Below, piece after piece: positions 1 through 16,802 of a stretch of DNA of 17,483 bases (position 1 is its first letter; each line of letters begins with the position of its first letter). The stretch spans positions 1 to 17,483 of the forward strand of contig RHPI01002849.1 in the NCBI GenBank assembly GCA_009103225.1, read 5' to 3'. The stretch is from Chlorokybus atmophyticus (Eukaryota > Plantae > Mesostigma and Chlorokybus algae). The notes below the pieces were generated by a model. That model made no database searches, had not been told where the DNA came from, and worked only from the letters and a program-made list of their open reading frames with translations. A program made the translations under genes and the position numbers.

Positions 1-1395
1 GCATGAGGCCGTTGGATCAAAGCCCCCAATATCTGGACCGTCCAACCCACATCCCCACAATAATAAGCAGCTCAAATATGCATAAAAATATGCAAAATGA
101 GCACAACAACATGCACAGTGTCACTCACACGCGCATGCACATATACAAGCAGAACACTTGTCACAAAGGACTTGTATTAGAAGGGGTGCAACTTGAGCAA
201 CTGCTTAAAGCACGAAATGAAATGGAAATGAGACTGCCTTTTATGCTATGCCTATCACTGATATAAAAAGGCTAAATGGCTGTTAACTGCATGAAGGAAA
301 TAAAGATAACTAGGAAACGTGGCTATAAAGTAAATGCATTCCAATGCATAAAGGAGCAAATTAGGAAGAAGGTCCATATACTTCCCCGTTAATTGGTGTG
401 CTAGGGGGTAAGACCCGGCGCCTAGCCCCTGAGGGTAAGTCTCCAACGCTTCCAGTGGGGCGCGGCTTGATATAGAGGCTTTAAGGGACCTACATAGGCA
501 GTAGGTCAGATATCTACAGTGTGGGGCCATTACCTCGGTTAGTCCACTAGTTAGGCACTCACAATAGGCACCAAACTACAACAAACTCCACGCGAGGGCT
601 GAATTTGCCTCTATTGTCGGAGGACCTTGTGCCATCTGTGTCCACCCCAACATCGCAGCCACGACTGTTATTGCTCGCTCCATGAGTGCCACCATGATGG
701 CCTGCGCACGCTGCAGAGGGTGCGTAGGCCATGGCACACATGGAGCGATGACACAGCATAGCACACCATGCACAATCATGCAGTGCACTGCAATATACAA
801 CCACAATGGAAAGACTCAGGCACACTACACTACAACAAGCACAACGCAAACAGCAAAAGCTTAGCGGTGGTGCCAGGGAGCACGCGGTGGGACTCAAGGA
901 GGGTTGCGGCAGCAAGTTGGCATTAGGCGGTTACAGCAGTAGTGTTGGCGGCTGCAGCCGTGTAGTTATGTAGGCGTGCTTGCACGCTGCTTGCGTGCGT
1001 GTGAGTATGCTTGTGCAGTGTGATAGGCATGGATGACAGTACGTGGCTTTGTAACGATGTTGATGCTGTACTAGTGATGAGAAGTAGTAGTGCGCTGAGC
1101 CCCTTAGCAACACGGAGAATGGCAAGGTAGGGGCAACCACAGCTCTTCACCTACACAGAAACTCTATGGTGATGTACAAATGATTGGAACATATTGCCAA
1201 ATAAGATGGTACTCATGAGCTTTGGTCACTTGGAAATACAGCACGTGCCCGGCAATGCCACGGCAATACAGCCAAAACCAGTGGAATGACTTCAGGCATA
1301 ATGCACGTTACGCACAAGCAGCTAGTGCAGTATTGGAAACGGGGCTGTGGAAGCATCTTGTGGCATGTATTGTGATGCAGCCAGCAGCAATCGAG

Positions 1396-4300
1396 CTACC
1401 TTGTCCTGCGTTTCGGGTACTTGTTTTGCCGAGACTTGGCTGCTTTGGCTGCTTTGTCCCGGCCTTTATGACTGCCAGACTTGGACCCAGTGTCGCTGCC
1501 ACTGCCATCCACATCATTGCTTGCGTGTTCCGCACTGCTCGCGCGCCGACTTGCTGTGCACTCAAAATCCCATAGCCGGCAAGGCGCATTTCTGCAGCCA
1601 GCAAGGAGTGCCGAGCCATGAACCTAAGAATAACGATGGACATAGGCATATGTAAAGATACTACACCATACGGATCCGCTATGATCAAGGCGTGCATGTC
1701 TGCAATACGGTTTAATGTGGCCCATGCGTGCAGGCCTTACGTGTGTACAAGCAGACACCACACATCGCCTACCTGGAAACAATTGACAGCGGTGTCAGCG
1801 TTGAGGCGCAAAAATGGGCGATGCCAAAGGACGCCATTGGCAGCAGGTGCACTGCGCACATCGTAGCACAACATCTCGCAGCTGCCACCCGAAAACACAA
1901 GCTTCCAATCGTCCAGCTGCACGCCCGCCGCCGCTCCATCATAGCCCGCCTCCATCGCACAGCACAGAACCGGCTGTTGACAGCCATGCCTCAAGTCCCA
2001 AAGCTGGATGCACCCAACCGATGAAGCTGCTAGCAGCCTGCATAGAGAAGACCTATTGCTCAGAACTGTGCCGGTCTGATGCAACATATACTGGCCCAAA
2101 CACAACCACAGCTTCTGGTAAGTGAGTACCTTCCAGAGGGGTCCCAGTTGAGCGCATTGCATAGCACACCACCTGCAAAGATGCACCCACAATTGTATGA
2201 CACGCCTCTTTGCGAATCGTCAACATCAAGTTGACAGAATGCTGTCCTTCTCACACAGCACCTGGTAGCATGTTGATGCAAGTGGCACTACTCGTGTCCC
2301 AAACACTGACTCCGTGCTCGCTGCCGCAATATAGCTGCTGTCGCTGCGTGTCCATGCAGATGGCGTGCAGTGGGCAGCCGACATTAAGCGACACTATCGG
2401 GGCGGACGAAGTCGTGTCCCAAATGTTCAGGTGTCCATCACTCGAGGCGGAGATGGGCGTTTCCGAGTGGAAAAGGCATGCTGTGATGCTGCCGGTGTGC
2501 CCGCGCAGCATGCGCACGCACTTGAGGTCGTCCAGCGACCACCAACGCAGCGTGCCTCCCGCACATCCCGACAGCAGATGAGAGTCGTCATATGCCAAGC
2601 AGGTCACATCTGCCTGGTGCCCCTGCATAAGACATCATGGAATTGCTTTCGATCGTCAAGAGCCTGCTAACAGCAACACATAATATTGCTATCCCAAACT
2701 TCCAAACTGTCGCACGAGGTTGTTTGATGTGGAAGCATGGTTGCCAATAATCTCAAAGCAATCGTCAACAACTCACAGCTTTCAATGACGACAATGTCCA
2801 GAGTTGAGGCAATGTCCCAAGCTGCTGCATGAAACGACTTCACAGGCACTCAAGACATGTCAACACAGCACGTGCACGCATACCTGTAGTATGCCAAGGC
2901 CGCGCTCAGAACCGAGGGACCAAACCCGTAGCAGTTTTCCCTGAGCGCAGTAAACGTTGTTGCCGTCGACTTGCAGGCACGAAGCATTATGACCAAGTTG
3001 GGCGCCCACATCATGCGCAGAGAATGCTCCTCGCTTCCATGGCCAGGCTCTCAACTCGCTGCGCCTGCAAAGGCGCCGACAGGCTGCAGGTGTCATGCCA
3101 GCTGGAGGTTCGGCTCCGAAAAGCCTTTCATGGTGGTTAGACCACAAGCTTGCTGTACCAGTCATTCGGCTGAAGTCTTGGTTCGCTCGAGCCACGGAGC
3201 ACAAGTCCCGCACGGACAGGTGCTCCAGGACCTGCAAATGCGCAAAGACTGCTCAAGACAGAACAAACAGAGCACAGTCAGCACGCAGATCAAACATGCC
3301 ACATCGGGCTTTGGCCATGTAGCATAGCCACATAGCATAGCAATGCGTTAGGCAATGCTCATAATGACGCACACAAGAAACAAGTCAACATGGATGGGCT
3401 CCTAGTATTACGAATATAGAGAATACGCTAGCATGCTCATGTCCTGAAGCAGCATGTTTGCGACTGGTAATGAAGGCTGGAGCCAACCATGCACGGATAA
3501 GCAACATGACATGCACTATAACCACCCATCGACGAAAGCGAGCGTGTACTGCTTACCATATTGTTGTGACTGTTTCATTGTTTGTAACAAGAGCATACCT
3601 GTAGCCACAGAAGGTCTGGCAGAGTCTCTGCGTGGCACGGATATGGCTTTGCTTCTTGTGCAGCTCCATCTGATGTCTCATTGGCCTCCTCGCTTGCAGT
3701 GCGTTCAGCGGGTGGTGTGTTGAGCATGGAGGCTAGGTTGTTTCTCGAGCGTGCGCGCGCTTCCCACAGCATGACACCTGTGTCCGCATTCTTGAAGTAG
3801 CGAATGCGGTGGTAAGGCACATCCGCATCCGGCCGGCTTGCAAACTCCTCAAACGGTGTCTCCTTCACGCTACTGTGAATCCGAGTGCTCCAGGCCGCTG
3901 CACCGCTCTTGCGGTGAAGCTCCGCAGACTCGCTCAACCAACCAATCTGTTTTGTGTTGTTGTTACAGCAAGGCAATGTATGTGTGGCGCTTATGCTGCA
4001 CACCACACTGCCCATGCAGTCTTACATTGAACGCTTACCACAGCACCTTACATGTTGCTATGCAGGCACGATGTTGAACTACACAACTGCCATGCATAGC
4101 CAAGATCTGCTTGGAAAACACTGCTGTGGTTATGAGCCAAACGCAGCTTTCGTATTGCAGTGCGGTGCGTCATAGCTACACATGCAATTGATCCGTGCAA
4201 CCGTGGCACACCAGCAGCGCTCGCGAGCTGCACCTTTGAGCTTCTTCACTGACATGCAAGTGTACATCAAGACTAACAGCGTGGATTCCTCGCAAAGAGC

Positions 4301-4627
4301 ATTGTGCAGCCATCACTGGCGTGTCCAGAGCTGTGAAGCGACCAATCAGCCCCATCCTCAGTGGAGCATGCTTGAACGCACCAAAAAGCGCGAAGAGGCG
4401 AGTTCAGGGTCCCACCGCAGGCGAGCGAACACCTTCTTGGCGCGGGCGGCGAGGGCCAGCATGTCTGGGACCACCTCCTCCGCGGGGAGGAGCGGGCCGC
4501 CCCATGCGGACGGCGACGGGCTCGGCACGGGGCTTGCGCCATCGCAGGCGGTCGTCGTAGACATCCGCCTGGGCCGTGGCGCCGGCACCGCCACGGCCGC
4601 AGAGACACCGCCACCGCCGCCCTCCAT
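1396..4627 (-). CDS. MJ1316(DUF504)-like domain + F-box + WD40-repeat protein, 7 exons, ~612 aa
   Basis: Exons (minus): 4627-4382, 3946-3599, 3231-2884, 2622-2262, 2172-2130, 2037-1773, 1623-1396. All introns are GT-AG with consistent phases; total 1839 nt. MJ1316-like: AKKVFARLRWDPELASSRFL|IGW...VKETPFEEF...DVPYHRIRYFKNADTGVMLWEAR. F-box: LPDLLWLQ|VLEHLSVRDLCSVARANQDFSRMTGTASLW. WD repeats include GHQADVTCLAYDDSHLLSGCAGGTLRWWS and GHTGSITACLFHSETPISASSDGHLNIWD. C-terminus is KYPKRRTR*. The start is uncertain because the frame stays open upstream of ATG 4627. Confidence 0.88.
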
Positions 4628-5560
4628 GGCGGAGCAGCCAAGTACCTGTCCAGGTAAATGCTTAGCTAGAACGCTGCTAACATGAGGCGTTTGTGGCAGC
4701 GCTCTGCTGGAGCCAAGAGACGAGCTGTGGGTGGCTCTGTCTGCTGCCGTTTGTTTCGTACAGCATCCGTTCCTGCCAAGGACTGCCTGGTGTAAGAATC
4801 TGTAAGGAATCGTCGGTAGGTGAGGAATCCTCTCAAACGAGGCACGGAATCGGCCCTCCTGCATAAAACGTGTAAGGATAAACCTGATAGACAAGAGCGC
4901 AACAGGCAAGTGTACTAAAGGTGTACATCAAATGCAAGACATGCATGCGCATGCACAACGTGTAGTCAAGTCAGCACGCAGCAACACATGCAAGGTACAT
5001 CAAACGAAATTCAGTTGACCACCGGGCTACTACTAGCACGCTAATCTACCGCCTCTACCCCGTTAGACATGCAGCAGTCAACATGCAGTTGGTAATCACC
5101 TGCCCACATGGGTGTTGTATTGCACTGTTATGGACATGCATGTATCTAATAAGCTGCATAGCGGTATAGCGGATGGGGCCATGCACATACATATAGGGGT
5201 GTGTGGATTTATAAGCGTGGTGCCTGCTATCTGCTGGTGCTGAGTGCATGCATGGCCTGCTACTTACTGCACGTTGTGTTGCGTGCCAAGCATTGCATAT
5301 CTGTGCATGAAGTGCTGATTGACTTATACGCTATATACAAGTTGCACATGTTGTAAAACGCTTGTCGATGGCTCATACATTATATGGCATGCAACAGCCC
5401 CGTAGCGCCGACGCTGTAGTCAACCACAGAGGGGTAGGCAGGCCACTCTTTACTGCACTGACCAAAAGTCTTCCAGTGGCTCACACTATGAACAGACATG
5501 CGTAGATACCGATGACATGGCAAGCAACTATGAAACACAACAAGCATAAATTCACAAACC

Positions 5561-5606
5561 ATAAGCACAAGCATAAGCATAAGCACGTAAGCATAAGCAT
5601 AACATA
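5561..5606. repeat. Imperfect (ATAAGC)n hexamer microsatellite
   Basis: ATAAGC ACAAGC ATAAGC ATAAGC ACGTAAGC ATAAGC ATAAC read directly. Confidence 0.85.
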
Positions 5607-5741
5607 ATGTAGATACAACTTCACACAAGCAATCAGCAAGCTAGCAGCAACATGGGTGGGGGCCCCACTAAGCTGGGCTAAGTGCACTAGACTAGACCAC
5701 AAAGCGAGCAAGGGAGCAGGTGTAGGGTTGAGAGCCTCTGT

Positions 5742-5769
5742 CTTTGTCTTGGGGAGGGGCAAGACAAAG
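5742..5769. repeat. Perfect 10-bp inverted repeat (hairpin) with an 8-nt purine loop
   Basis: CTTTGTCTTG-GGGAGGGG-CAAGACAAAG; the two arms are exact reverse complements. Confidence 0.8.
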
Positions 5770-5924
5770 GCTGCATGTATGCGTCGCACAGGCTATACCA
5801 ATTCAACATTCGAAAAGGCTAATGCACATCTGTGTCCATCTTGTAAGCTGTATGCCGGTTGTCGGTGACTGGTAGATGGAGTTGGAGGTGAAATCACAGC
5901 CAGTAACACCTTCCTACTTTGTTC

Positions 5925-6110
5925 TACGCTATACGTTGTGACAACCTGTATTGAAGTAGCAACGCACCATCACCTCCACATTGCCCACATTGCCCTTGTG
6001 CATGACAATACTCTACAGCACCTGCAGTAAAGGATACATCAGCTGACGGAGTGCAATATCTCATGGCTGGTTTTTGCAAAACTGAACTTGCGACAGCGCA
6101 GGATATCAAA
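5925..6110 (+). mobile_element. Possible degenerate non-LTR retrotransposon relic (zinc-knuckle region downstream of RT)
   Basis: Across stops and a frameshift: IRCDNLY*SSNAPSPPHCPHCP / HDNTLQHLQ*RIHQLTECNISWLVFAK. This loosely resembles the CPxC...H...C...ERHN arrangement of algal LINE ORF2 tails. Resemblance from memory only. Confidence 0.22.
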
Positions 6111-6364
6111 TGCGTATCAGCGTTTGTATACCAACAGAGTCCTGCCAACTGCAATACAGCAACACAACTATCTAAATGGCGACAGCTCACCCTTGCGTTT
6201 GTCACACAGTGGGCAGAGCTGTATGGCGTGACTTGTGCATCATGGTCAACAGGAGCTGCACGGGACATCCGTGTGCAAGATCTGACGGGCAGATGCAACA
6301 GCCACAACACTGCATGGACTATTGTATGCAGGTTCACCCTCACCCTTCCAGCAAGCAAACCATT

Positions 6365-9300
6365 TCATGCGAGCGTTTGCTTCTTGCCTTTTCCCTTTGC
6401 GTCAATCTGCGCACAATTGAGCGTTTTGGCAATCCTCAATCTGTGACGGTATTGTTAGCAACAACGACAACTGCCACAACTCAACAACAGCCAACCGATC
6501 GCAAAATGCAAATATGTACCCAAACCCTCGGTTACATACTTTATCAGCTGTGCCCTTGCGGCCTGTAACGAATTCATCGTAAATGGCATCAAGCCGCGCG
6601 CGCTCCCCTGCGGTAACAGAAGGGCGCAAAGCAGTAGCAGCGGAGCGAAGGTGTGCCATGGTCAGCAACACATTCTCGGCGCCAGCATCAGGGTCATCCG
6701 GATGCTGTTCAAGATAATCGTGCACAGCGCCAAGTTGCGCATCACTCAACAACGCTTGCAGGTCCGCACCACTGAAGCCGTCCGCGCGCCTGGCGATGTC
6801 CTTCCAGCTGACCTCTTCAGCAACGCGCAGCTTGCGCCCGAGAGATGCAAGTATTTGTTCCCGTTCAAGCACGGAGGGAAACCCGCAGAACACAAGCCGG
6901 TCTAGACGTCCGGGGCGCAGCAATGCAGCATCTATCAAATCTGGCCGGCTGCAAAACGCAAAAACCGGTCACAAGACGGAGACATAACAAACATCGAGCT
7001 CTAGTAGACCAGTACAACATGCCAGAGGCCATTGCCAATGCATTGAGAATAGGCGACACCAATGGAAATGCAACTACGTTGCATGGACCGGACTGGTGTT
7101 GTACCTGGTAGCTGCAAGCACAAAGACGTTCTCAAGCTTTTCAACACCATCAAGTTCCGTCAAGAGCTGGTTGACCACACGATCAGTAACCCCAGTATTG
7201 TCATGCCCACGCTTGGGGGCAATTGCATCAAACTCATCGAAAAACAGTATGCATGGCGCCGCTGCTGCCGCTCGCTTGAAGGTATCTCGCACTGCCTGTT
7301 CGCTAGCGCCTATGTATTTGTTGAGCAGCTCCGGTCCCTGTGGAAGGAAAACAAAGCCTGTGTACACACTGCGCAACCATCCTATTTATCGCTGTAACCT
7401 ACATGCATACCTTCACGCCAATAAAGCGCAGGCTGCAAGCTGCCGCAGCAACCCCAACGATATGAGTCTTTCCACAACCCGGCGGTCCAAACAGCAAGAT
7501 GCCAGATCGCAGGCGCAATGGAGCCATTGCAAAAAGCGACGCATGTCGAGACGGTAACTCTAGTGTCTCTTGCAGTACTTGGCGGACATCCTGCAAACCT
7601 CCAACATCTTCCCAAGTCAAGTGCTGTTCGCTAGCGGCTTGCACGCTGCCAGCAGCTTGCAAAGACCCGGGCACGAGCCCTTTGCTGGCAACGGTGAAGT
7701 CCTCGTCCAGCACTTCCAACTTGGGTATCACACGTTGCTTGCTGGATGGTACTAAGTGGAGGTGCAGCGCTTGAGCTGCACGGGACAGATAGCGTGTTGA
7801 GGCTGAGTGGACAGCGCGCTCCAATAGCAATGCCTGCACATGCACTGATGAGTATAAAACCAATTGAAGCAACAAACGTTGAATGATAGTGCATTGGCTC
7901 ACCATGTCAGCAGCATCATATGCGTCTGCGCGAGCGCTAGCAGCTGCAATGACTTGAGTGCTGCATGCCACTCCTCTTGCCGCGACAGCTGCAGCAAGGA
8001 TTGATGTACGATCCCCACTGGTGGGAGGTGGCAGCTCCACCTCGAAGTCAAGTCTACCTTCCATGACAAGCAGTGCACAAGTCAACAAGCTGGGTGAGTT
8101 GTATAGCCAATGTACCCCGCACCCAACACAGACTGTTCAGACGCATTCTCGGCTGTGGGCTTATGTCATAAAGTTTTAGGTCAACAGCTTGCAGATGTGC
8201 AAAGCTTACCTGCCACACGCAATGACTGTGCCAGGGCATCAGGTGCGCGACTGGTGGCCAAGTAAACTATGGGGCACGCGTCCAACATTGAACGCTGACA
8301 GTTATCCATCAGTTCGCATAGATACCCAGACAAAGCTGCATTGCTTTCTGAGGCCGCACCACCTTCGCTTGCAGGCAGGATGGCGTCCAAATCATCAAGA
8401 ATAACAACGGAAGGAGCGTAATCAACGGCTTCTTGCACTATCCTTTTTAACGATTCTTCCAGCTTCTCCGGTTGCTCGCCGACAAGTTCATTGCAGCGCA
8501 ACACCACACTGCACAACCATTGCTCAGCATGTTTCTATTGGCTAGGATTCCAACAACTGCATGTCGAGCATGAGTACCGTGACAATCACTATACCTGTGG
8601 CATAAACTCTGCTGGTTGCGCTGGAAGTGCCTTGCAAGTGCTGCTGCCACAGCTGATTTGCCACAACCTTGGGGTCCATGCAACAGCAGGCCCCCGGAGG
8701 CTGGAGTTTGCAGCCTGCACAGCTGAGCTTGACCTCCTCGCGTCAGAGCTGGAATCAATCCTGCATCACATGTAACACACTCAGAGCTGCAATAATGAAG
8801 CAAAGACACTGGCCACTGTACTGTGCTTCTCACGTGTCAACGCAGTTCTGATGGGTGTTGAAAACCATTGCAGTTGTTCAAGCTCCTGGCCCTCAATCAC
8901 ATTCTCGCTGAGCTTTGGGCAGGACAGCGGTGCTCCTAGGCTGACACTCAACTTACGATTGGTTGAGGATTGTTGTTGCAGGTCGTGCAGCAAAGCACGA
9001 TCAATGACATAGTATACTAGCAGACCTGTGAGTCACAGCCAAAGTCATGACCCATTACGAGATGCACAAGTAGAGCCAAGGTACAATTGTCGCTGATGAA
9101 AGCAATATAAGTACCAGTTTCCGAGTCTGTACTCGTACTGTCCTCTTGAATGGACTTCACGACGTCAAAGCGAAACAATGCCGACCTGACGTTCTCTATT
9201 TCATCTTCTCCTGTCGCCGCCAGTTTGATGAAACTGCCGCAGGCCAGAGGAACGCCATTGCAATGGTCGGAATAGCCTTGATGGCCGTCCAACCAAGCGG

Positions 9301-10933
9301 CTAACAATTGAACTACATACGTTGTCTCAGAGGAACTGGCAGCAGCCTGAAGCTCATGATGAAGGCTGTGCACAGCGCAGTCTTTGTCTGCTTGGAGATT
9401 GACGGGTAGTACACTGAGTGGCGGCAGCACACTTGGACCGTGAGTGCATTTTGTTACTTGCACACCTGCAACAATTATGGTGAATAACACGGCTCAAGTT
9501 AGACAAAAGTTAAAAGGTACACCAAGGCAAACCGTGCACTCACGTGAGAAGACCCTCGCAAAAAGCTGCTGCCGCAATGCGCTTGAGAGCATCACATGAT
9601 CTGGCGCTACATCGGGGCGAGATGCTAGACGCACTGGAAAACAAGGTTGAACACTGCCCGCCTGCGCATCACCCTTGCCATCTTGTTCACGTAGGGTTTT
9701 GTCCTCCAACACTTGCTTTTTCTTGGCCCGTGATAATGGCCTCAGCAGAAGCAAGTCACCATCAGCATACCCACAGCGCGATGCAGTGTCCGTTGACACA
9801 AAGACGACTGCAGATGGCGACAACCAGCAGCTGATGTTGGCAAAGGCGACGGGGGTGAGGTGCTCAGAGCTAAGAACTTGGACTCGCCAGATATGGCGCT
9901 TCACACGGTCTGGTGTACGCTTCGGCACTTTAACGCGCGGTGCTGAGGGAAGTTCACGCAGCTTTGGGGCCACAAACAACTCTGTGCCAGCAGTAAGCCG
10001 AACCTGTTGTTAGCGACGACGCACGCTCAGCACAATCACATAAACCCATTGCACTCGTTTGGAACAATGAAGCAACATTCCGCTGCTCATCATGTTAGTG
10101 GTGCATATGCATGCTTGCATGGGAGGTTCAACAGCAGCAAGCGGCCTGCTCACCAATCTGCTTGGTGATGTTGATACTGCTCGCAAGTAAAGCACGGCTT
10201 GATTGCGAATCCAAGCAGGGAACTCTTGACCTTCTCTAAGAACACCCACCTGAGCAATGCATGCAATGAGCAACAGTTGGCGACATGAATTCCTCATGCA
10301 AGCTTGGTGCATGCGTTGCATGCTGCTAGTGCTAGAGCGATCGCAGCGACAGCAAAGCCACTTGTTAGTCACCTGGATGAGCAACTGCTCTTCTAGATAA
10401 GCTGCATTAACCTCCAAGATCTCCCAGTCATCAGACGAAGCAGGTTCGACTCCAACGCTGGTGGCGGCAGGAACGTCTGCACGTAGCTTCACGCGCACTG
10501 GGCAACTGTCCTCAAGTCCTATGCATGACGCAAGTGCAGCTGGCACCTGCAATTTGCCATGTGCAACAGCTGAATTGTGCTTGATGCAGGCAAACACAAA
10601 CATTCAAACATCACAGCATGAAGACAGAACAGGACGGGCAGCAGCATTGGGCGGAAAGGTCAGTTGAACACCCAAGCACGCGTTAGTGATTATAACAACC
10701 AGCTGAAATGGCACCTCAAGGTGTTGTCCTGAAGATGAAGCGCCAGCCCATGCAACGTCCCATGTTCTCGGACCAGATTCTGATATTTGTGCGTTGCGAG
10801 AGCGGGACAGGCTGAGCTGCAGGACCACAGGCAGCTGCGGACCGCTGCCGTCATGCAGCAGAGCGCTTATGACCCCCGCCGGCAGCGCCACGAAGCAGCT
10901 AGCCTCCCGCACCAGCTGCACCACGAGCTCCAT
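6365..10933 (-). CDS. PEX1: Peroxisome biogenesis AAA+ ATPase PEX1, 13 exons, ~1069 aa
   Basis: Exons (minus): 10933-10715, 10546-10373, 10249-10154, 10003-9544, 9465-9115, 9016-8834, 8760-8595, 8508-8210, 8057-7903, 7833-7411, 7337-7105, 6948-6540, 6406-6365 (3210 nt). PEX1 N-domain motifs: [49 protein letters not shown]1: GPQGCGKS and VILDDLD. D2: [81 protein letters not shown]. Plant-type C-terminus [10 protein letters not shown]. Mid-gene exon boundaries (8760-9465) are less certain. Confidence 0.95.
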
Positions 10934-11357
10934 GACACCAGCCAGGCCCTGGCTGGTCGCGTCCAACACCGCCGCCGCCGCCGCCGCCGCAGCGGCAGAG
11001 GCCGGGCATATGATGACTTGATCTCCACACTCAAATCAACTGCGTATAAGCATACAAACCCCATTTCAGTCGCGAACGGGTCAACATGTAGCCATGATGT
11101 AGGTACCCATCACGTACAACACGTGTCACAGATGGTTATGTACCGTACATGGCTTACATTGTTGTCCGCGGCTGTTACATGTACATGTACACAGCCGCGT
11201 CACCACACTAATACTATTTATTATTATTGCTTACAATATGCTTACACCAAAGTGTGCAACGCGTTGCCGACGGCTTGCCGTTGATGCGCTCCGATGTTTG
11301 GCTGCAGTGGTTGTCCATGTTGGGGTGCACGTAGCTGGTGGTGCTGGTGGCGGCAGC
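10934..11357. promoter_or_regulatory. Short head-to-head intergenic region (putative bidirectional promoter) between PEX1 and the LysM-channel gene
   Basis: The two inferred ATGs (10933 minus, 11358 plus) are separated by 424 nt. GC-rich flanks surround an AT-richer core (TATTTATTATTATT near 11215-11228). Transcription start sites are not determinable. Confidence 0.55.
10969..10990. repeat. (CCG)7 trinucleotide microsatellite upstream of the PEX1 ATG
   Basis: CCGCCGCCGCCGCCGCCGCCGC read directly. Confidence 0.9.
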
Positions 11358-12535
11358 ATGGCTTGCTGCCATGCGGCGCTGCTGCTGACACCTTCAGCGG
11401 GGGTATGTGCGGCAGCAAGGAGGCGGCATGGGTACATGCTGCAGCCTCCCACTTGGCCTGGATGTGGGGGGCTGCAGTTGAGCGGGGTGGGCTGGGCAAG
11501 GAGCTTTTCCTCTGCTGCAAGGTTTTCTCACCACTGCAACCGCATTGGCAGGCGCTTCCGGCCTAGTCAGCGCCAGGCCAGGTGCCAAAGCGATGCCACT
11601 GCTGGTGGCCTGGGTGACACAGGTGCGTCTTTTGGGCAAATTCTCGCTGCATTGTCATCAAGTGAGCACTGCTTTGACATGCGCATAGCACGCAAAACAT
11701 AACTGAGCATGCATGTGCTGGCCAAGCACATGCATGCTCAGTTCTGCACAACTGTCATACCAGTACTTACTGTGCAAATCGCTTTGCTCAGTAGATACTC
11801 GCAAGCTCGTCGAGGGCATGATACTAACAGAATGCACGTGTCAATGTGCGTCACCGTGGCAATTGTACACTAAGACATTGCATAAGTCAAAGAGACCATT
11901 CTGGTGACATCACTACCACAGACATTTGCACTGCCAGCGTTGACAGGCAACAACCAGTTTGTTGCCGGCTTCTTGCTCATTGGGTATGCTACCTGTCTGC
12001 TCACATTGTTGGTCGGTGAGGCATCTTCGCACTTGCACACCGCAAGTTGCACTCATAGCAAACCCCCCACCATTTTGTGCAGCACAGCCCACTCCAATGA
12101 GCAGATCTGAAACTACTTGGTGGTGCGTAGGGCCATTGGAAGAACGGACCACGATGCCAGACTTGTTGGAAACCCCAGACGGCGGAAGGCCTACTTGGGT
12201 TCGCACAATGGTTCTGCTGGGGGGTGCCGCTGCGTTTGCAGCCTTTGCGTTCTTCGGAGCACGAGCCTCACATCGGTCCGATGTGCAAGTGAGGTTTTTG
12301 TCTAGCGTGATGTGTGGAGTATTGTTGCGTGACTTGTATGACTTGTTTGCGCGGTATGCTGCAGAATTGCCCTACACCAGTTGCGACACAGCGGTATTAT
12401 GAGTACGTAGTGAAGGATGGAGATACAATGGGGTCCATTGCCGACACGTTCCATGTGCCCTTGGAAAAGTTAGCAGCCGTCAACAAGGGCGCTTATGACA
12501 TGATCTATACAGGCCAGAAGCTCACCATACCACAG
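11358..12535 (+). CDS. N-terminal module: transit-peptide-like leader, TM helix, LysM domain
   Basis: Exons 11358-11622 (ATG in a GC-rich island, donor G|GTGCGT), about 12083-12288 (acceptor ambiguous, 12131 also fits) and 12365-12535. TM helix: MVLLGGAAAFAAFAFFGA. LysM: YVVKDGDTMGSIADTFHVPLEKLAAVNKGAYDMIYTGQKLTIP, matching the Y.V..GDT...IA......L...N.....I..GQ.L.IP consensus. Unspliced read-through would end at TAA 12551-12553 (VLELW*). Confidence 0.85.
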
Positions 12536-15500
12536 GTACTTGAACTTTGGTAATGCGCATTGTCAAGCTCAAGTGCATCTTTAAACTTGCTTGACCGTGC
12601 AACCATTCAGTAAGTTAAACACGCACGGACTTGTGCTGCAAGTTGTAGTCTCACATCTAAATGCAGACAAGCTTCAACAGCATTGGCATCTCTCAAGTGC
12701 ATGGCATTGTCGGCGTCCCATGGTTGACTCTAGATTAACATATGCATTGTACAATACAGCGCGTAGCAGTTGCATTCTAAGCATTAGGTCGTTATCCTGG
12801 CTTGTTCCTCCAGGAACAAGCCAGCAATGGTTACCACCACGAATCGGGCACATTAAGCACAAACGCACTGCAAACCTTGAAAGACCTGCAGAAGGACCCA
12901 GACCTGTCATTTTTCAGCCGGGCATTCCGACTGGCATCCCAGCCTCGCAAGCACTCCGTGAGTTCCATGTAGTGCATGAGTCTGCAAAGTACAGTTCGTA
13001 TCCTTGCTTACAAAAAAATGTCTATTAGGCGTTCGAGATTGCAGAGTACCGGCTCAAGCTGGCTTTCGAGCACAGCCCTGCCTCTAAGCTCATGTTCCTG
13101 TTCGTGGTTGTCAGCATCCTTTGGGCCATTGGCACAGTGGTATACTATCGCGTGCATCCCGAACATAAATGGACATTGTCCTTGTACAAAAGCTGGAGCT
13201 ACATCTCGGGAGCCACGGGCTCCAGTCTTGATGATGAGGTTGGTGATAAGCTAGCCTGACCTGACTAACACAATATTCATACGCATTGATACACATGTAT
13301 ATGCGTATCCTGTGTTTGGTCAAGGGTTCTCCGGAGAAGCCACTTTTATGCTGCGAATGCGAGCTGATATGACTTGCAGCAGTGACACAATTTGTGCCTG
13401 GCAGGAAGGGCCCACCCAATTCGTCGCCAGCATACTGTTCTTAACAGGTGGGATCATCTTAACAGGTGTCATCTTAACAGGCGGGATCACCTTAACAGGT
13501 GGGATCATCTTAACAGGTGTCATCTTTTTTGCACTGCTGCAGGGTTTAACCACTGAGACATTGTCATCTCAGGTGAGTTGTGAGCCTCCGCTGTGGTCAC
13601 AGTTCCGCGCAATTTCCATGTGGGGTGCTTACAGCGTATGTCATGCAGATGGACATGTTGCGCAGTGGCCACAGTTCCGTCGTTGAAAGCAACCACACAG
13701 TGGTGAGCGCTAGAGTAGCACAACGATGGCCAGCCATGTAGCTCAGCTTTGGCGTTGGGCAGGCACAATATTGCGCACCACTTGCGCATTCCAAAGCTGG
13801 CTTCCCGGCAGGTGTTGGGTTGGAATGAGACCACTGTGCCCCTCATTCGTGAGCTGTGCGTAGCCAGCAAAGGCAGCGCCTCTGCCAAGAAGTCGGTAAG
13901 CTGCATTGTTTACGGCAAGCTGCCATTGATTGGTCCTTGCATACAACTTGCGATTGACATGCTGTACATATGTGTCCTGTACGCGCTGTCGGACAACATC
14001 GTTTGCACAGATCGTTGTCTTGGCCGACCGCAATATAGATGATATGAAGCGAGAGGTGGCTACCATGGTCCCTCCAGAAGACATACGTGCGGCCAGGATA
14101 GTGTATCGAGAGGGTGACCCGGCATCCCTCAATGCACAGCTGTGGGTGGCAGCCGACACCGCACGTGCAATCGTGGTCTTAGCTGAACCTGGTGACCCGG
14201 AACTTGTAGATACAAAGGTACAGGACCTGAATACAGGCAGGCTTGTCGTACTGATTGACAGCAGTAGCTCTCAATATGTGTTGTCTGCAGGCGCTGCGTG
14301 TCGTGTTGGCAACGAAGGGGACGGTTCAGCATGCATTGCATGGGCAGAAGATTTTGGGTGCGCCAAAAACTCATAAGGATCGGCAGATGCTGCTGCATGC
14401 CCCACACAAAGGAAGCCATGAGCCCGCCATCGCACCGGATGTAAGGTTACCTCTGGTTGTACAGACCAAAACCGCAAAGGGACGCCGACTTGTGCAACTT
14501 GCAGCAGGCAATCAGGCAAGTGATCCGCGTCATGTAGCATGGTTGTAGCGACTGTGCCTTGTTTATAAATCATCAGTGTAGACCTTGCACGAGCACACTA
14601 CCGTGGCTGTGATTGCATGGCAGTCAGTGCATGCTTGTTGGTCATCGGTATGCGCGCTCATCTTGATGCTGCAGCAGTCTGCTGTGTGCGTTTGAGTTCA
14701 CAACCTTGAGCTTACTGTCCGTACGGCTGCAGGTTACCATGGTTGACACCGACAGCCTGATTGGCCACAACTTGGTACTGTGTGCAACGCAACGACCAGG
14801 CCTGGCACAAGTACTGCGCAAGCTTCTTGGCTTTTCGCACGAAGAGTTTTACATCAGGTCAGCCCGACCTGATATAAAGCTCTAGAGCAATAAGCCATTG
14901 GCCATTCGTCACATGCAACGTCGGGCTCACAGGTCTTGCACATGCAGTGCATGGCCACAACTTGCAGGTCGAACATTCACAGACGCCATGGGTTCATTTC
15001 CCAATGCTTCGCCTGTAGGCATCATGGATTTCCGTTCACAACGGGTATGCTTGTTGATGTGCAGAGCAGACCCCTCACTGTTTTTCTGTCGCTTGACACT
15101 GAAAGCTGCTATGGCACATGACGTCGCTTCGGATGCAGATTGTGGTGCCAAAGGCTGACTACATTATGAAGGCAACTGATCAACTGGTGGCGGTTGCCCG
15201 CACGCAGGTACACACGCATTTCGTTAGACATGAAGTCCTTGCCAGATGAGGCATTAACGGCACTGATTATTGCAACAATATGGCAGGAAGACTACTTCCC
15301 TGCAGCACGACCATTTCGTCCAATCGTCACGTCTCTACCTGCCAGACAAGTAACTGCCCTTGCAGTGCCCAAGCAGTTTCTTATTTGCAACTGGCACAGT
15401 GCCATGGTGAGTAATGAGTGCTGACTTGACCTTGCAATGCATATGCACTGTCGTGGTGATGTCCAACATGTTGAAACAGGGCGTTTGATGGTTTCAATGG

Positions 15501-16802
15501 TCGCAGGCAGAGATGGTCACCGATCTCAATGAATGGGCAGCAATTGGCAGCGAGGTTGTTATATTTGCCAATAACGCTGACCAGAATGCACAGAGTGAAC
15601 TGCAAAGACTTGCCAGCAAAGGGACATTTCCACACATCAAGCTGGTACTTGTTGCGGCATATACTTCTTCTTCGACCATAAGCACATGGCTACTACTGAA
15701 CCAAAGTTATTGCAACTGGCCCATGCTTGCAGTCGTTTGTGACGGGCTCGACAACCAGTTTTGAGGACATTGCCAGCATCAAGCCCGCGCGTTTTGATTC
15801 CATCATCATAGCATCCCCGCGCTTGAGGGAAGGCGACATTGTTGATATTGACGGCAGGTGAAGCTACTTATCACTGAAGAGCCGCAGCAGCTACTGCCAC
15901 TGTGTGAAACAACATTTTGCTTGGTGTGTGTGTGCTTGTTGTGTGTGCAAAATTATGTTCTACAACACCAGTGGCTTACTGCAAGCCGACTGGTTAACAC
16001 TGTTGCGCCGCAGTGACTCGAGTGTCCTTGCCACAATATTGTTGATCGAAGACAATGTCAAACACTGCACGCAGCATCCGCAAATCACGGTTGAGGTCAA
16101 CGATCCACTAACGGTTAACCTTGTCAAGGTATTCTTGGTTGGTTGCGCATAGTGTCCCAACTGCCAACTGGTCACTCATACAAAGGCTATTTTGCTACAG
16201 ACAGCATCAGCGGAGACTCAGTGCGTGGTTTCAACGCAAATGGCAGCAAATTACATTGCTCAAGCATGTGTAGATAAGCAAGTCATAGTGCTGTGGCGGG
16301 ATCTACTCGATGCGGATGGAAAAGAAATCTATCTGAAGCCGATTAACAGGTGCCAATTCGTTGGTGTGAGTTGCATTGTGAGTGCCTCCCTAAATTATCG
16401 TAAACCTTGGGATTGCATTACATTTACAAGGTATGTCAACCCGGGAGAGCATATCTCATTTTGGGAGCTGCAACAAAGAGCTCTGATGCGCGGTGAAGCT
16501 GCATTGGGTTACCGCGTTACGTCCAAGGACGCTGTTGTGCTCAACCCACAGAATAAGGTAAGCACTAGTACAGAAGTATTGATGAATGGTACTTTTACAA
16601 GGCTGTACATGGCATGCCAAGCTGCCAATGTCTAACGATATGAAGTGTGGAAGCTATCTGACTGTGAAACAATTGTGAGCACACTTTCTCAATGTATATC
16701 TCCTCTCTGTCATAAAAGCCTCCAATATCTGTGCAGGAGCAATTGCTGGAGTTCGGTGCGGATGATGCAGCCGTGGTTATAGCAGAGGATGACCTCATGT
16801 AG
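11358..16802 (+). CDS. Joined model: single LysM-CASTOR/POLLUX fusion gene, ~930 aa
   Basis: A phase-0 donor CAG|GTACTT (12536) falls right after the last LysM residue and matches the phase-0 acceptor TTCCTCCAG|GAA (12813). The channel module has no start codon of its own. Only about 260 nt separate the modules, and that gap lacks the GC-rich island seen at the other three gene starts. This model overlaps the two module features above. Confidence 0.68.
12814..16802 (+). CDS. CASTOR/POLLUX/DMI1-family cation channel module (M1-pore-M2 plus two RCK domains)
   Basis: Exons: 12814-12957, 13029-13238, 13405-13572 (or 13405-13447 + 13517-13572), 13649-13702, 13812-13895, 14011-14217, 14291-14515, 14733-14857, 14948-15044, 15139-15207, 15287-15406, 15507-15644, 15733-15857, 16014-16128, 16201-16349, 16431-16557, 16737-16802 (TAG). 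Family motifs appear in order: YRLKLAFEHSPASKL, LRSGHSSVVESNHTVVLGW, IVYREGDP, ARAIVVLA, ALRVVL, RPGLAQVLRKLLGF..EFY, WPQLAGRTF...FPNA, FDSIII, DSSVLATILLI, LDADGKEIYLKP, ALGYR, VLNPQNK, VVIAED. No in-frame ATG lies between the upstream stop (12778-12780) and the first TM helix, so an upstream exon is needed. Confidence 0.92.
13440..13524 (+). repeat. Tandem array of five 15/18-nt units, C-TTAACAGG(T/C)(GGG)ATCA(T/C) / C-TTAACAGGTGTCAT, inside the M2 helix exon; candidate 69-nt intron 13448-13516
   Basis: Read directly: TTAACAGGTGGGATCATC / TTAACAGGTGTCATC / TTAACAGGCGGGATCACC / TTAACAGGTGGGATCATC / TTAACAGGTGTCATC, with units starting at 13441, 13459, 13474, 13492 and 13510. Confidence 0.95.
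14516..14732 (+). other. Non-canonical GC-AG intron in the channel gene
   Basis: Donor CAG|GCAAGT and acceptor GGCTGCAG|GTT. This join preserves LPLVVQTKTAKGRRLVQLAAGNQ|VTMVD, which is colinear with the family's HVVVE...LV.LVGG..IETV segment. I found no GT donor that gives this phase while keeping that segment. Confidence 0.75.

What the first reader, a model, noticed from the sequence alone, without database searches (positions are those of the whole stretch)
11358..12535. Transit-peptide-like leader and extra TM suggest a plastid-envelope channel with LysM facing the intermembrane space
Seen: the first ~80 aa are rich in Ala/Ser/Arg, have no acidic residue before ...QARCQSD, and are followed by one TM helix and then LysM. 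Established: in MthK-type channels the segment before M1 lies on the same side as the RCK ring; Arabidopsis PEC1/PEC2 are POLLUX-family plastid envelope channels; moss and some streptophyte algae keep peptidoglycan between the plastid envelopes. Inference: with the N-terminus in the stroma, LysM and RCK would face the intermembrane space, where the channel could bind plastid peptidoglycan. The RCK motifs (ALRVVL, PGLAQ..LGF) look closer to CASTOR/POLLUX proper than to PEC as I recall it, which would imply independent plastid recruitment.
Basis: inference. Interest (0 to 1): 0.7.

Follow-up and report, generated by a model that had tools for sequence, protein, structure and literature searches.

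The report
LysM-bearing CASTOR/POLLUX-type channel, Chlorokybus
This green-alga gene encodes a calcium-regulated-type cation channel (the family of the plant CASTOR, POLLUX and PEC channels) that carries a sugar-binding LysM domain on the same side as its gating ring; three early-branching relatives of land plants share the fusion, which may let a chloroplast-envelope channel touch the chloroplast's remnant bacterial wall, but where the protein sits is untested.

Summary
The stretch is real. It is the first three annotated exons of a 20-exon Chlorokybus atmophyticus gene (944 aa, P0001).

**What the gene encodes, in order:**
- a basic leader with no acidic residue for 78 aa
- an acidic spacer
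- one hydrophobic helix (TM0)
- a LysM domain (Pfam E = 2e-12)
- a linker with no membrane helix
- the M1-pore-M2 channel core
- a CASTOR-type RCK gating ring

**Supported:**
- Mesostigma and Klebsormidium have the same order of parts and group with this protein at 100/100.
- The PEC-like proteins also have three membrane helices, and PEC1's RCK ring is reported to lie in the envelope intermembrane space.

**Not supported or unresolved:**
- The acid-free leader is no more than chance given the local base composition. Its coding signal is ambiguous, and the Klebsormidium leader is acidic.
- Intron 1 holds a coding-like, frame-compatible stretch that would add a second helix and flip the topology.
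- My trees cannot place this group nearer PEC or nearer CASTOR/POLLUX, so "independent plastid recruitment" is undecided.
- No targeting predictor, transcript or binding data were available.

**Verdict:** a new variant of a known family, apparently undescribed. The plastid-peptidoglycan reading is attractive, at about 0.4.

The parts
11358..11622 (+). Exon 1: 88-aa leader, basic, with no acidic residue for 78 aa. It looks like a transit peptide or presequence, but its coding status is ambiguous.
   Evidence: Exact mapping of P0001; composition; codon score -0.09 bits/codon with no frame preference; AlphaFold pLDDT about 30, disordered.
11893..12015 (+). Candidate extra exon inside intron 1 (not in the annotated model). 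It is a 123-nt, stop-free, phase-1-to-phase-1 stretch coding a second hydrophobic segment, FVAGFLLIGYATCLLTLLV.
   Evidence: Kyte-Doolittle 19-residue mean of 2.31, one of only four such segments on the + strand of the window. In-frame codon score +0.02 against -0.84 and -0.31 in the other frames. Donor score 5.5 (top 3% of decoys) but acceptor score -1.0 (61% of decoys score as high). No counterpart in the orthologs.
12131..12288 (+). Exon 2: acidic spacer, then helix TM0 (12199-12255), followed by the small-x-small motif ARA|SH.
   Evidence: AlphaFold helix 111-129; aligned with the Mesostigma helix.
12365..12535 (+). Exon 3: LysM domain (Pfam match at 12404-12532).
   Evidence: PF01476, E = 2.4e-12, 47 bits, full length 1-43/43; beta-alpha-alpha-beta fold, pLDDT 83-92; nearest solved LysM domains are Ecp6, LytE, AtlA and SafA.
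12814..12957 (+). Exon 4: 48-aa linker with no membrane helix.
   Evidence: Best Kyte-Doolittle 19-residue mean is -0.39; low-confidence short helices in the model.
13029..13238 (+). Exon 5: amphipathic helix before M1, then M1 (about 13077-13154), pore helix (13170-13208) and filter stretch SGATGSSLDDE.
13405..13572 (+). Exon 6: inner helix M2. It contains a 69-nt tandem-repeat stretch (13448-13516) that the orthologs lack and that is bounded by GT..AG.
   Evidence: Tandem repeat, period 18/33; gap in the Mesostigma alignment; pLDDT 41-46 at residues 331-348; splice scores 7.5 and 5.2, and M2 length equals that of the orthologs once the stretch is removed.
13649..16802 (+). Exons 7-20: tandem RCK gating ring of the CASTOR/POLLUX type, stop codon included.
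   Evidence: Castor_Poll_mid, E = 1.1e-25; phmmer to LjCASTOR 9e-59 and MtDMI1 6.5e-52; Foldseek to the LjCASTOR gating ring, TM-score 0.90, E = 3e-42.

Best explanation
The gene encodes a tetrameric two-helix-pore cation channel of the CASTOR/POLLUX/PEC family, gated by a tandem-RCK ring. It has acquired a single LysM domain between an N-terminal anchor helix (TM0) and M1.

Proposed route and topology (inferred):
- The basic N-terminal leader acts as an organelle presequence.
- TM0 acts as a stop-transfer or signal-like segment. It may be cut after its small-x-small motif.
- The N-terminus therefore ends on the stromal side of the plastid inner envelope.
- LysM, the linker, both ends of the M1-pore-M2 hairpin and the RCK ring lie in the intermembrane space, as reported for PEC1.

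Proposed role (inferred): in that space the LysM binds the GlcNAc-containing glycan of the plastid peptidoglycan layer. This would either tether the channel to the wall or division site, or couple gating to the state of the wall.

Shown here: the domain content and order; their conservation in Chlorokybus, Mesostigma and Klebsormidium; the absence of a helix between LysM and M1; the CASTOR-like ring.

Inferred: same-side topology (from K-channel architecture); plastid-envelope location (by analogy with the PEC-like paralogs and from leader composition); peptidoglycan as the ligand (from LysM family knowledge and the organism's reported pathway).
For: - Exact gene model and domains.
- Orthologs with LysM plus Castor_Poll_mid in Mesostigma (P0054) and Klebsormidium (P0091) form a 100/100 clade with the window protein, branching as the species do.
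- One hydrophobic segment before LysM in all three, none between LysM and M1.
- TM0 and its following CSP[SA]HA motif are strongly conserved between two Klebsormidium-like genomes.
- In Mesostigma and Klebsormidium the N-flank of TM0 is more positive than the C-flank, as for a segment that exports what follows it.
- PEC-like proteins (the Physcomitrium member is named 'POLLUX-like 2' by NCBI) share the plan of acid-poor leader, one helix, then M1-M2, i.e. three helices. Canonical members have four.
- PEC1's RCK domain lies in the intermembrane space (PMC8644588).
- Core peptidoglycan enzymes are reported in all streptophyte algae (PMC7455551).
[quoted passage not shown] PPASP, a helix-plus-LysM protein, co-occurs with the peptidoglycan pathway in streptophytes (PMC4815162).
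- 80 prokaryotic homolog loci carry no LysM, so the fusion looks like a streptophyte innovation.
Against: - No targeting prediction or localisation data were available.
- The leader's acid-free composition is within chance and its codon signal is ambiguous. It could be a mis-called 5' region: exon 2 has an internal Met 17 residues before TM0, and Mesostigma has one 10 residues before its helix, which would then read as a textbook signal peptide.
- The Klebsormidium leader is acidic (12.7% D/E) and is not conserved between two Klebsormidium-like genomes.
- Green-algal plastid and mitochondrial presequences look alike.
- A coding-like extra exon in intron 1 would give four helices and put the N-terminus, LysM and RCK all on one side.
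- The annotated model is imperfect elsewhere: it probably retains a 69-nt intron in M2.
- Kinship with PEC is not established, and the PPAHA resemblance between the two Mesostigma paralogs is not significant (E = 0.35).
- LysM does not always bind glycan: the K+ sensor built on bacterial Kbp contains a LysM (PMC11178854; its mechanism is from my own knowledge).
Confidence: 0.4

Rival explanations
1. Secretory-pathway channel. The annotated leader is not translated, or is a cytosolic tail, and TM0 is an ER signal peptide or anchor. LysM and the RCK ring would then lie in the ER or perinuclear lumen, or outside the cell, where LysM would meet chitin or bacterial wall fragments.
For: - Small-x-small motif directly after the helix in all three orthologs: ARA|SH, AHA|RA, SHA|HS.
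- Internal Met shortly before the helix in Chlorokybus and Mesostigma. The Mesostigma stretch MSGLARNITR-WVGAASLALCCAVFGGIAA-PPPAHA reads as a classic signal peptide.
- Ambiguous coding signal of exon 1; acidic leader in Klebsormidium.
- Canonical CASTOR/POLLUX/DMI1 are nuclear-envelope proteins (PMC8644588).
Against: - It would place a Ca2+-type RCK ring in a lumen or outside the cell. I know of no precedent; the only family member with RCK on the far side from its N-terminus is the plastid channel PEC1.
- Klebsormidium has no Met between its annotated N-terminus and TM0, so a leader of some kind must precede the helix there.
- In Chlorokybus the stretch from the internal Met to the helix has net charge -1, which is atypical for a signal peptide.
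Confidence: 0.2
2. Four-helix model. The stretch 11893-12015 is a real exon, constitutive or alternative, so two helices precede LysM as in canonical CASTOR/POLLUX. The N-terminus, LysM and RCK ring would all lie on one side (stroma, cytosol or nucleoplasm), away from any peptidoglycan layer if the N-terminus is stromal.
For: - Stop-free and phase-compatible at both ends, length divisible by 3.
- In-frame codon score (+0.02) above the 95th percentile of intron windows and frame-specific.
- Donor GTGAGG in the top 3% of decoys.
- One of only four strongly hydrophobic stop-free segments on the + strand of the window.
- It would split an unusually long 508-nt intron into introns of 270 and 115 nt.
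- Canonical members have four helices.
Against: - It is not in the annotated model, which was built with transcript support genome-wide (PMC7027972).
- The phase-compatible acceptor is poor: score -1.0, and 61% of decoys do as well.
- Mesostigma, Klebsormidium and all three PEC-like proteins have exactly one helix before M1. In Klebsormidium the leader, helix and linker are one uninterrupted exon.
- T-rich intron sequence readily translates to hydrophobic residues.
Confidence: 0.12
3. Mitochondrial inner-membrane channel with a two-part presequence: a matrix-targeting signal, then a stop-transfer helix cut after small-x-small. LysM and RCK would lie in the mitochondrial intermembrane space, and LysM would serve protein contacts or an unknown ligand.
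For: - Arg/Ala/Ser-rich, Lys-free, acid-free leader followed by a hydrophobic segment and a small-x-small site.
- This is the layout of yeast cytochrome b2-type sorting signals (my own knowledge).
- Green-algal plastid and mitochondrial presequences are hard to tell apart (my own knowledge).
Against: - No glycan ligand is known in that compartment.
- The closest relatives in architecture (three helices) are plastid-envelope proteins.
- The lineages where the fusion is seen all keep plastid peptidoglycan genes according to the literature.
Confidence: 0.1
4. The location is as in the best explanation, but LysM is not a wall sensor. It would be a structural or protein-binding module, or part of an ion-sensing unit as in bacterial Kbp, acting on the neighbouring RCK ring.
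For: - LysM sits on the RCK side, tethered by only about 50 residues in Chlorokybus.
- A LysM-containing K+ sensor exists (PMC11178854).
- Sequence alone cannot tell chitin-, peptidoglycan- or non-glycan-binding LysM apart: the nearest solved structures are a mix.
Against: - Most characterised LysM domains bind GlcNAc polymers.
- The nearest match in the 138-437 aa size range is in a multi-LysM M23 peptidase of the NlpD/DipM kind, but it shows only generic LysM similarity (47% over 45 aa).
Confidence: 0.12

Closest known systems
PEC1/PEC2 (plastid envelope POLLUX-like channels) and their algal and moss orthologs (P0026, P0082, P0092)
   Same: - Castor_Poll_mid plus tandem RCK domains.
- M1-pore-M2 core.
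- Acid-poor leader, then a single helix before M1, giving three helices in all.
- The pore-helix motif LWKSWS in the Chlorokybus PEC-like protein resembles LYKSWS here.
   Different: - PEC proteins have no LysM.
- Only about 24% identity (174 bits) to the Chlorokybus paralog.
- The filter stretch differs: SSTHT against SGATGSS.
- Clade membership is unresolved.
CASTOR / POLLUX / DMI1 (nuclear-envelope channels of land plants)
   Same: The gating ring is the best sequence and fold match: LjCASTOR 202 bits, TM-score 0.90; MtDMI1 180 bits.
   Different: - Canonical members have four helices (two before M1) and no LysM.
- Their filter is ADxGxH (PMC8644588).
[quoted passage not shown]
   Same: An N-terminal membrane helix followed by one LysM; restricted to streptophytes that keep the peptidoglycan pathway (PMC4815162).
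   Different: PPASP is a small two-part protein with no channel. No sequence was available here, so homology of the helix-LysM module was not tested.
DipM (nucleus-encoded LysM + LytM peptidoglycan hydrolase of plastids)
   Same: A LysM-bearing, nucleus-encoded protein acting at the plastid peptidoglycan layer in the intermembrane space; present in Klebsormidium, moss and Selaginella (PMC4015805).
   Different: DipM is a soluble hydrolase with several LysM repeats, not a membrane channel.
Prokaryotic CASTOR/POLLUX-related RCK channels (about 620-650 aa, two helices)
   Same: Highest BLAST scores after the orthologs (P0004 275 bits, 33% identity); same pore plus ring.
   Different: No leader, no TM0 and no LysM in 80 loci examined.

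Membership tests
CASTOR/POLLUX/PEC channel superfamily | Castor_Poll_mid domain within a tandem RCK gating ring | tested here: met
   PF06241, E = 1.1e-25; LjCASTOR ring phmmer 9e-59; Foldseek TM-score 0.90.
CASTOR/POLLUX/PEC channel superfamily | Two-helix pore (M1, pore helix, M2) directly before the ring | tested here: met
   Alignment with 36 family members and AlphaFold helices 263-288, 294-306, 319-377. M2 is interrupted by a 23-aa repeat that is probably an unspliced intron.
Canonical CASTOR/POLLUX/DMI1 | Four membrane helices (two before M1) | tested here: not met
   One helix before M1 in the annotated model and in both orthologs. A possible second helix depends on an unverified exon.
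Canonical CASTOR/POLLUX/DMI1 | Filter stretch of the ADxGxH type | tested here: not met
   SGATGSS, SGGAGSS and NSPGAD in the three LysM-type proteins; AD[TP]G[AS]H in the Salpingoeca and oomycete proteins of my canonical group (the Coccomyxa protein has GIDWTF at that place). The plant CASTOR/POLLUX filter itself is quoted from my own knowledge.
PEC clade | Monophyly with PEC orthologs | tested here: inconclusive
   98/87 with 42 rows, falling to 73/91 once Klebsormidium was added. The alternative grouping with canonical members is not rejected, p-AU 0.41. No Arabidopsis PEC or land-plant CASTOR/POLLUX full-length sequence could be fetched.
PEC clade | Odd number of helices, so that the RCK ring is on the far side from the N-terminus | tested here: met
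   Three helices in the annotated model and orthologs, as in the PEC-like proteins. The published inference for PEC1 is in PMC8644588.
PEC clade | Plastid inner-envelope location | not testable with these tools
   No targeting predictor, proteome or imaging data were available.
Chloroplast transit peptide | N-terminal stretch poor in acidic residues and rich in hydroxylated, Ala and Arg residues, conserved as a property across orthologs | tested here: inconclusive
   Met in Chlorokybus (0% D/E in 78 aa) and Mesostigma (1.7% in 60 aa); not met in Klebsormidium (12.7% in 63 aa). The composition is within chance for the local DNA and the codon signal is ambiguous.
LysM (PF01476) | Full-length match above the curated threshold, with a beta-alpha-alpha-beta fold | tested here: met
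   47 bits against a cut-off of 20.9. Orthologs score 45.7 and 23.3 bits. Fold and pLDDT.
LysM (PF01476) | Binding of GlcNAc-containing glycan (peptidoglycan or chitin) | not testable with these tools
   Needs a binding assay. The nearest solved domains bind chitin or peptidoglycan.
PPASP | Membrane helix followed by a single LysM, in streptophytes that keep the peptidoglycan pathway | tested here: inconclusive
   The arrangement is met. Sequence kinship was not tested because no PPASP sequence could be fetched. Pathway presence rests on the literature.

The most novel reading that the evidence does not exclude
Early-branching streptophyte algae keep a dedicated ion channel in the plastid inner envelope that is physically coupled, through a LysM domain beside its Ca2+-type gating ring, to the relic peptidoglycan wall. 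Wall state (growth, division, damage) and envelope ion or Ca2+ fluxes would then be linked. This group may be the 'third' nonvascular-streptophyte clade seen in published PEC/CASTOR/POLLUX trees, lost together with the wall in seed plants.
Probability: 0.3. Interest if true: 0.85.

Novelty: new variant of a known kind. Interest (0 to 1): 0.6.

Why it matters
If the reading holds, this would be the first membrane protein proposed to connect the plastid's remnant bacterial wall to ion signalling across the envelope. It would give a concrete, testable handle on two open questions: what the plastid peptidoglycan layer does beyond division, and how the PEC/CASTOR/POLLUX family diversified before land plants.

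Even if the location turns out different, a LysM fused on the gating-ring side of an RCK channel, conserved across three algal classes, is an unreported domain combination. I found no paper linking LysM to this channel family, and LysM is not mentioned in the PEC family study.

Tried and rejected
- **Transcript-derived fragments for the 5' gene model.** A search with P0001:1-250 returned only one unrelated multi-LysM peptidase. Exact look-ups of P0001 and P0054 found no contigs.
- **Supplementary tree data of the PEC paper.** None are held, so I could not check whether these proteins are its 'third clade'.
- **Short C-terminal fragments P0014 and P0034.** L001 is a Klebsormidium-like contig holding only the gene's 3' end. 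L002 is a canonical CASTOR/POLLUX-like gene.
- **Metagenome scan with the three-ortholog alignment.** It gave 80 loci, all intronless prokaryotic homologs at 21-29% identity and without LysM.
- **The first tree's LysM+PEC sister grouping (98/87).** I do not rely on it. Both branches are long, and support fell to 73/91 once Klebsormidium was added.
- **The PPAHA resemblance after TM0 in the two Mesostigma paralogs.** Not significant (E = 0.35).
- **Hits P0002 and P0003 of the representative search.** These are repeat proteins matching the translated in-frame intron inside my query, so they are false positives.
- **The idea that the long insert after ALRVVLATKG in P0001 is a read-through intron.** Rejected: Klebsormidium has a matching insert, LPMVVQAQTARGHHLVKLAGGDQ.
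Full report
**What is there.** The window is nuclear DNA of the streptophyte alga Chlorokybus atmophyticus. A HMMER search with two C-terminal exons returned a 944-aa protein, P0001. Its source label is jgi/Chlat1 ChrspC240389S00933. P0001 maps back onto the window without a mismatch as 20 GT-AG exons, 11358..16802. The finding's span, 11358-12535, is exactly exons 1-3.
- Exon 1 encodes an 88-aa leader. In its first 78 residues A is 14%, R 14%, S+T 13%, G 10%, with no K and no D/E. The first acidic residue is D79, in QARCQSD.
- Exon 2 encodes an acidic spacer and one hydrophobic helix, VRTMVLLGGAAAFAAFAFFGARA.
- Exon 3 encodes a complete LysM domain (PF01476, E = 2.4e-12).
- Downstream lie a 48-aa linker with no membrane helix, an amphipathic helix, M1, the pore helix, M2 and a tandem RCK ring carrying Castor_Poll_mid (E = 1.1e-25).

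**Structure model.** An AlphaFold model built on a 37-sequence alignment has mean pLDDT 76. The leader is disordered, TM0 is a low-confidence helix at 111-129, and the LysM is a confident beta-alpha-alpha-beta unit. The ring superposes on the LjCASTOR and MtDMI1 gating rings at TM-scores 0.90 and 0.88. By sequence these are also the best solved matches, at 202 and 180 bits.

**Is it more than chance?** The LysM and the channel clearly are. The leader's composition is not.
- With a first-order model of the local DNA, 18% of stop-free simulated 78-codon sequences also lack Asp and Glu. Non-coding frames of this window hold many stop-free, acid-free runs of 50-137 codons.
- A codon log-odds score trained on exons 2-20 against introns 2-19 gives exon 1 -0.09 bits/codon, with no difference between the three frames. 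The other exons average +0.20 and intron windows -0.47.

Exon 1 therefore looks like either a fast-evolving targeting peptide or translated GC-rich leader DNA. The sequence alone cannot tell which. An in-frame ATG lies upstream at 11238, and an out-of-frame 90-aa ORF starts at 11294.

**Conservation.** The word-based search found a Mesostigma viride ortholog, P0054 (970 aa, 34% identity), with LysM and Castor_Poll_mid. A cluster look-up of a 55-aa fragment led to the Klebsormidium nitens 'ion channel' GAQ91556.1 (P0091, 1104 aa). It also has LysM above the Pfam threshold, before the channel.
- The three proteins form a 100/100 clade that branches as the species do.
- All three have one hydrophobic segment before LysM and none between LysM and M1.
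- Each helix is followed by a small-x-small motif: ARA|SH, AHA|RA, SHA|HS.
- In K. nitens, nearly all of the leader (all but its first eight or so residues), the helix and a 200-aa linker are one uninterrupted exon.
- A second Klebsormidium-like genome from a metagenome conserves the helix, the CSP[SA]HA motif, a 60-aa stretch before LysM, the LysM itself and a basic cluster RKRKRKPGKG. It does not conserve the leader.
- Eighty prokaryotic homolog loci have no LysM within 10 kb. The fusion therefore looks like a streptophyte innovation.

**Topology.** In M1-pore-M2 channels with a C-terminal RCK ring, both ends of the hairpin lie on the ring's side (established K-channel architecture). Whatever the membrane, LysM is therefore on the RCK side, and with a single TM0 the N-terminus is on the opposite side.

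This three-helix plan is also that of the PEC-like proteins. These are P0026 from Chlorokybus, P0082 from Mesostigma and P0081/P0092 from Physcomitrium, the last named 'putative ion channel POLLUX-like 2' by NCBI. Canonical members (Coccomyxa, Salpingoeca) have four helices. The CASTOR/DMI1 constructs are described as lacking 'the first two membrane domains' (PMC8644588).

For Arabidopsis PEC1, trypsin treatment of intact chloroplasts placed the RCK C-terminus in the intermembrane space, and an uneven helix count was inferred (PMC8644588). The PEC-like leaders are acid-poor in the same way: the Chlorokybus one has R 19%, K 0 and D/E 0 in 63 aa. Flank charges around TM0 favour 'N-terminus stays, LysM crosses' in Mesostigma (+2/0) and Klebsormidium (+3/-1), and are neutral in Chlorokybus (-1/+1).

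**Why peptidoglycan is a reasonable ligand.**
- DipM, a nucleus-encoded LysM+LytM hydrolase, sits at the peptidoglycan layer in the intermembrane space in Cyanophora and at the chloroplast surface in moss. It has homologs in Klebsormidium and Selaginella (PMC4015805).
- PPASP, a helix-plus-LysM protein, is found only in streptophytes that keep the pathway (PMC4815162).
- I could not check the Chlorokybus proteome for these genes myself.

**The main threat to the topology.** Intron 1 is 508 nt; the other introns are 71-278 nt. Inside it, 11893-12015 is stop-free and 123 nt long. It starts and ends in the phase left by exon 1 and expected by exon 2, and it codes ...FVAGFLLIGYATCLLTLLV (Kyte-Doolittle 2.31).
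- For it: the in-frame codon score is +0.02, above the 95th percentile of intron windows, against -0.84 and -0.31 in the other frames. The donor GTGAGG scores in the top 3% of decoys. Only four such hydrophobic stop-free segments exist on the + strand of the whole window: M1, M2, this one, and one made by a TG repeat.
- Against it: the only phase-compatible acceptor is poor, with 61% of decoys scoring as high. The annotated model omits it. No ortholog or PEC-like paralog has a second helix.

I put its inclusion at roughly one in eight.

The annotation is not flawless. The M2 exon contains a 69-nt tandem-repeat stretch (13448-13516) that the orthologs lack and that AlphaFold cannot model (pLDDT 41-46). 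It is bounded by GT..AG with good scores, and removing it gives an M2 of exactly the ortholog length, LFLTGVIFFALLQGL against LFLIGLVVFATLTGL. It is most likely an unannotated intron.

**Family placement.**
- BLAST of the window protein gives 354 bits to Mesostigma, 275 to a prokaryotic homolog, 216-236 to canonical eukaryotic members and 174 to the Chlorokybus PEC-like paralog.
- A 42-row tree joined the LysM and PEC-like groups at 98/87, but both sit on long branches.
- With Klebsormidium added, that node fell to 73/91. Forcing the LysM group together with the canonical group costs only 1.7 log-likelihood units (p-AU 0.41).

The published tree describes a third, fully supported clade of nonvascular streptophytes beside CASTOR/POLLUX (PMC8644588). 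These proteins may be that clade, but no supplement was available to check. I could fetch no Arabidopsis PEC or land-plant CASTOR/POLLUX full-length sequence. The filter stretch (SGATGSS, SGGAGSS, NSPGAD) differs from both the AD[TP]G[AS]H seen in two of my three canonical-group proteins and the PEC-like SSTHT.

**Rivals.** Four alternatives remain open: a signal peptide with a start at the internal Met; a mitochondrial two-part presequence; the four-helix model; and a LysM that does not bind glycan. They are set out with evidence in the rival section. No paper in the searchable library mentions a LysM fused to this channel family.

**Limits of method.** All whole-protein work used the database entry P0001 by id. 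The only joins were short local translations inside one script, to show what removing candidate mini-introns would do to the M2 exon (the 69-nt one among them). The window is not human, viral or toxin-related.

**Verdict.** The architecture and same-side topology are well supported and conserved. The plastid-envelope and peptidoglycan interpretation is coherent and has good precedents, but it rests on analogy. This is a new variant of the CASTOR/POLLUX/PEC family.

Noticed in passing
window 13448-13516: A 69-nt tandem-repeat stretch inside the annotated M2 exon adds 23 residues (GGIILTGVILTGGITLTGGIILT) that the orthologs lack. It is bounded by GT..AG, is in frame and has good splice scores. 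It is probably an unannotated intron, so P0001 is likely 23 aa too long in the pore-lining helix.
   Followed up: partly
window 11893-12015: A cassette-like, coding-looking stretch in the unusually long intron 1 would add a second membrane helix before LysM.
   Followed up: partly
window 1-10990, minus strand: A PEX1-like AAA ATPase gene (PEX-1N, AAA and AAA-lid matches) runs divergently from the channel gene. A (CCG)7 run lies at 10969-10990 near its 5' end, and an AT-rich patch at about 11205-11235 lies in the 370-nt space between the two genes.
   Followed up: partly
window 11238 and 11294: Before the annotated start at 11358 there is an in-frame ATG (which would add 40 aa, including one Asp) and an out-of-frame ATG opening a 90-aa ORF. 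The true start and the 5' UTR are therefore uncertain.
   Followed up: no
P0091 residues 343-353; L005 6198-7568: The Klebsormidium orthologs carry a conserved basic cluster (KWRKRKRKPGKG) between LysM and M1. It resembles a nuclear localisation signal or a strong positive-inside determinant and is absent in Chlorokybus and Mesostigma.
   Followed up: no
window 13209-13238 (filter stretch): The selectivity-filter stretch reads SGATGSSLDDE, one residue longer than the canonical AD[TP]G[AS]H and followed by an acidic cluster shared with Mesostigma. Ion selectivity may differ from that of CASTOR/POLLUX.
   Followed up: no
window 14291-14533 (exon 10): A roughly 60-aa insert after ALRVVLATKG in the first RCK lobe looked like intron read-through. 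It is shared with Klebsormidium (LPMVVQAQTARGHHLVKLAGGDQ), so it is a real feature specific to this group.
   Followed up: partly
L003 6250-6400 versus L005 6330-6400: Upstream of the annotated Klebsormidium acceptor, the reading frame LWCPLCGS(A/V)S is conserved between two Klebsormidium-like genomes. The 5' gene model there may also be incomplete.
   Followed up: no
window 16350-16430 (intron 18): This intron is stop-free and in frame with its flanking exons. Its translation drew false hits to bacterial repeat proteins (P0002, P0003) in the representative search.
   Followed up: yes
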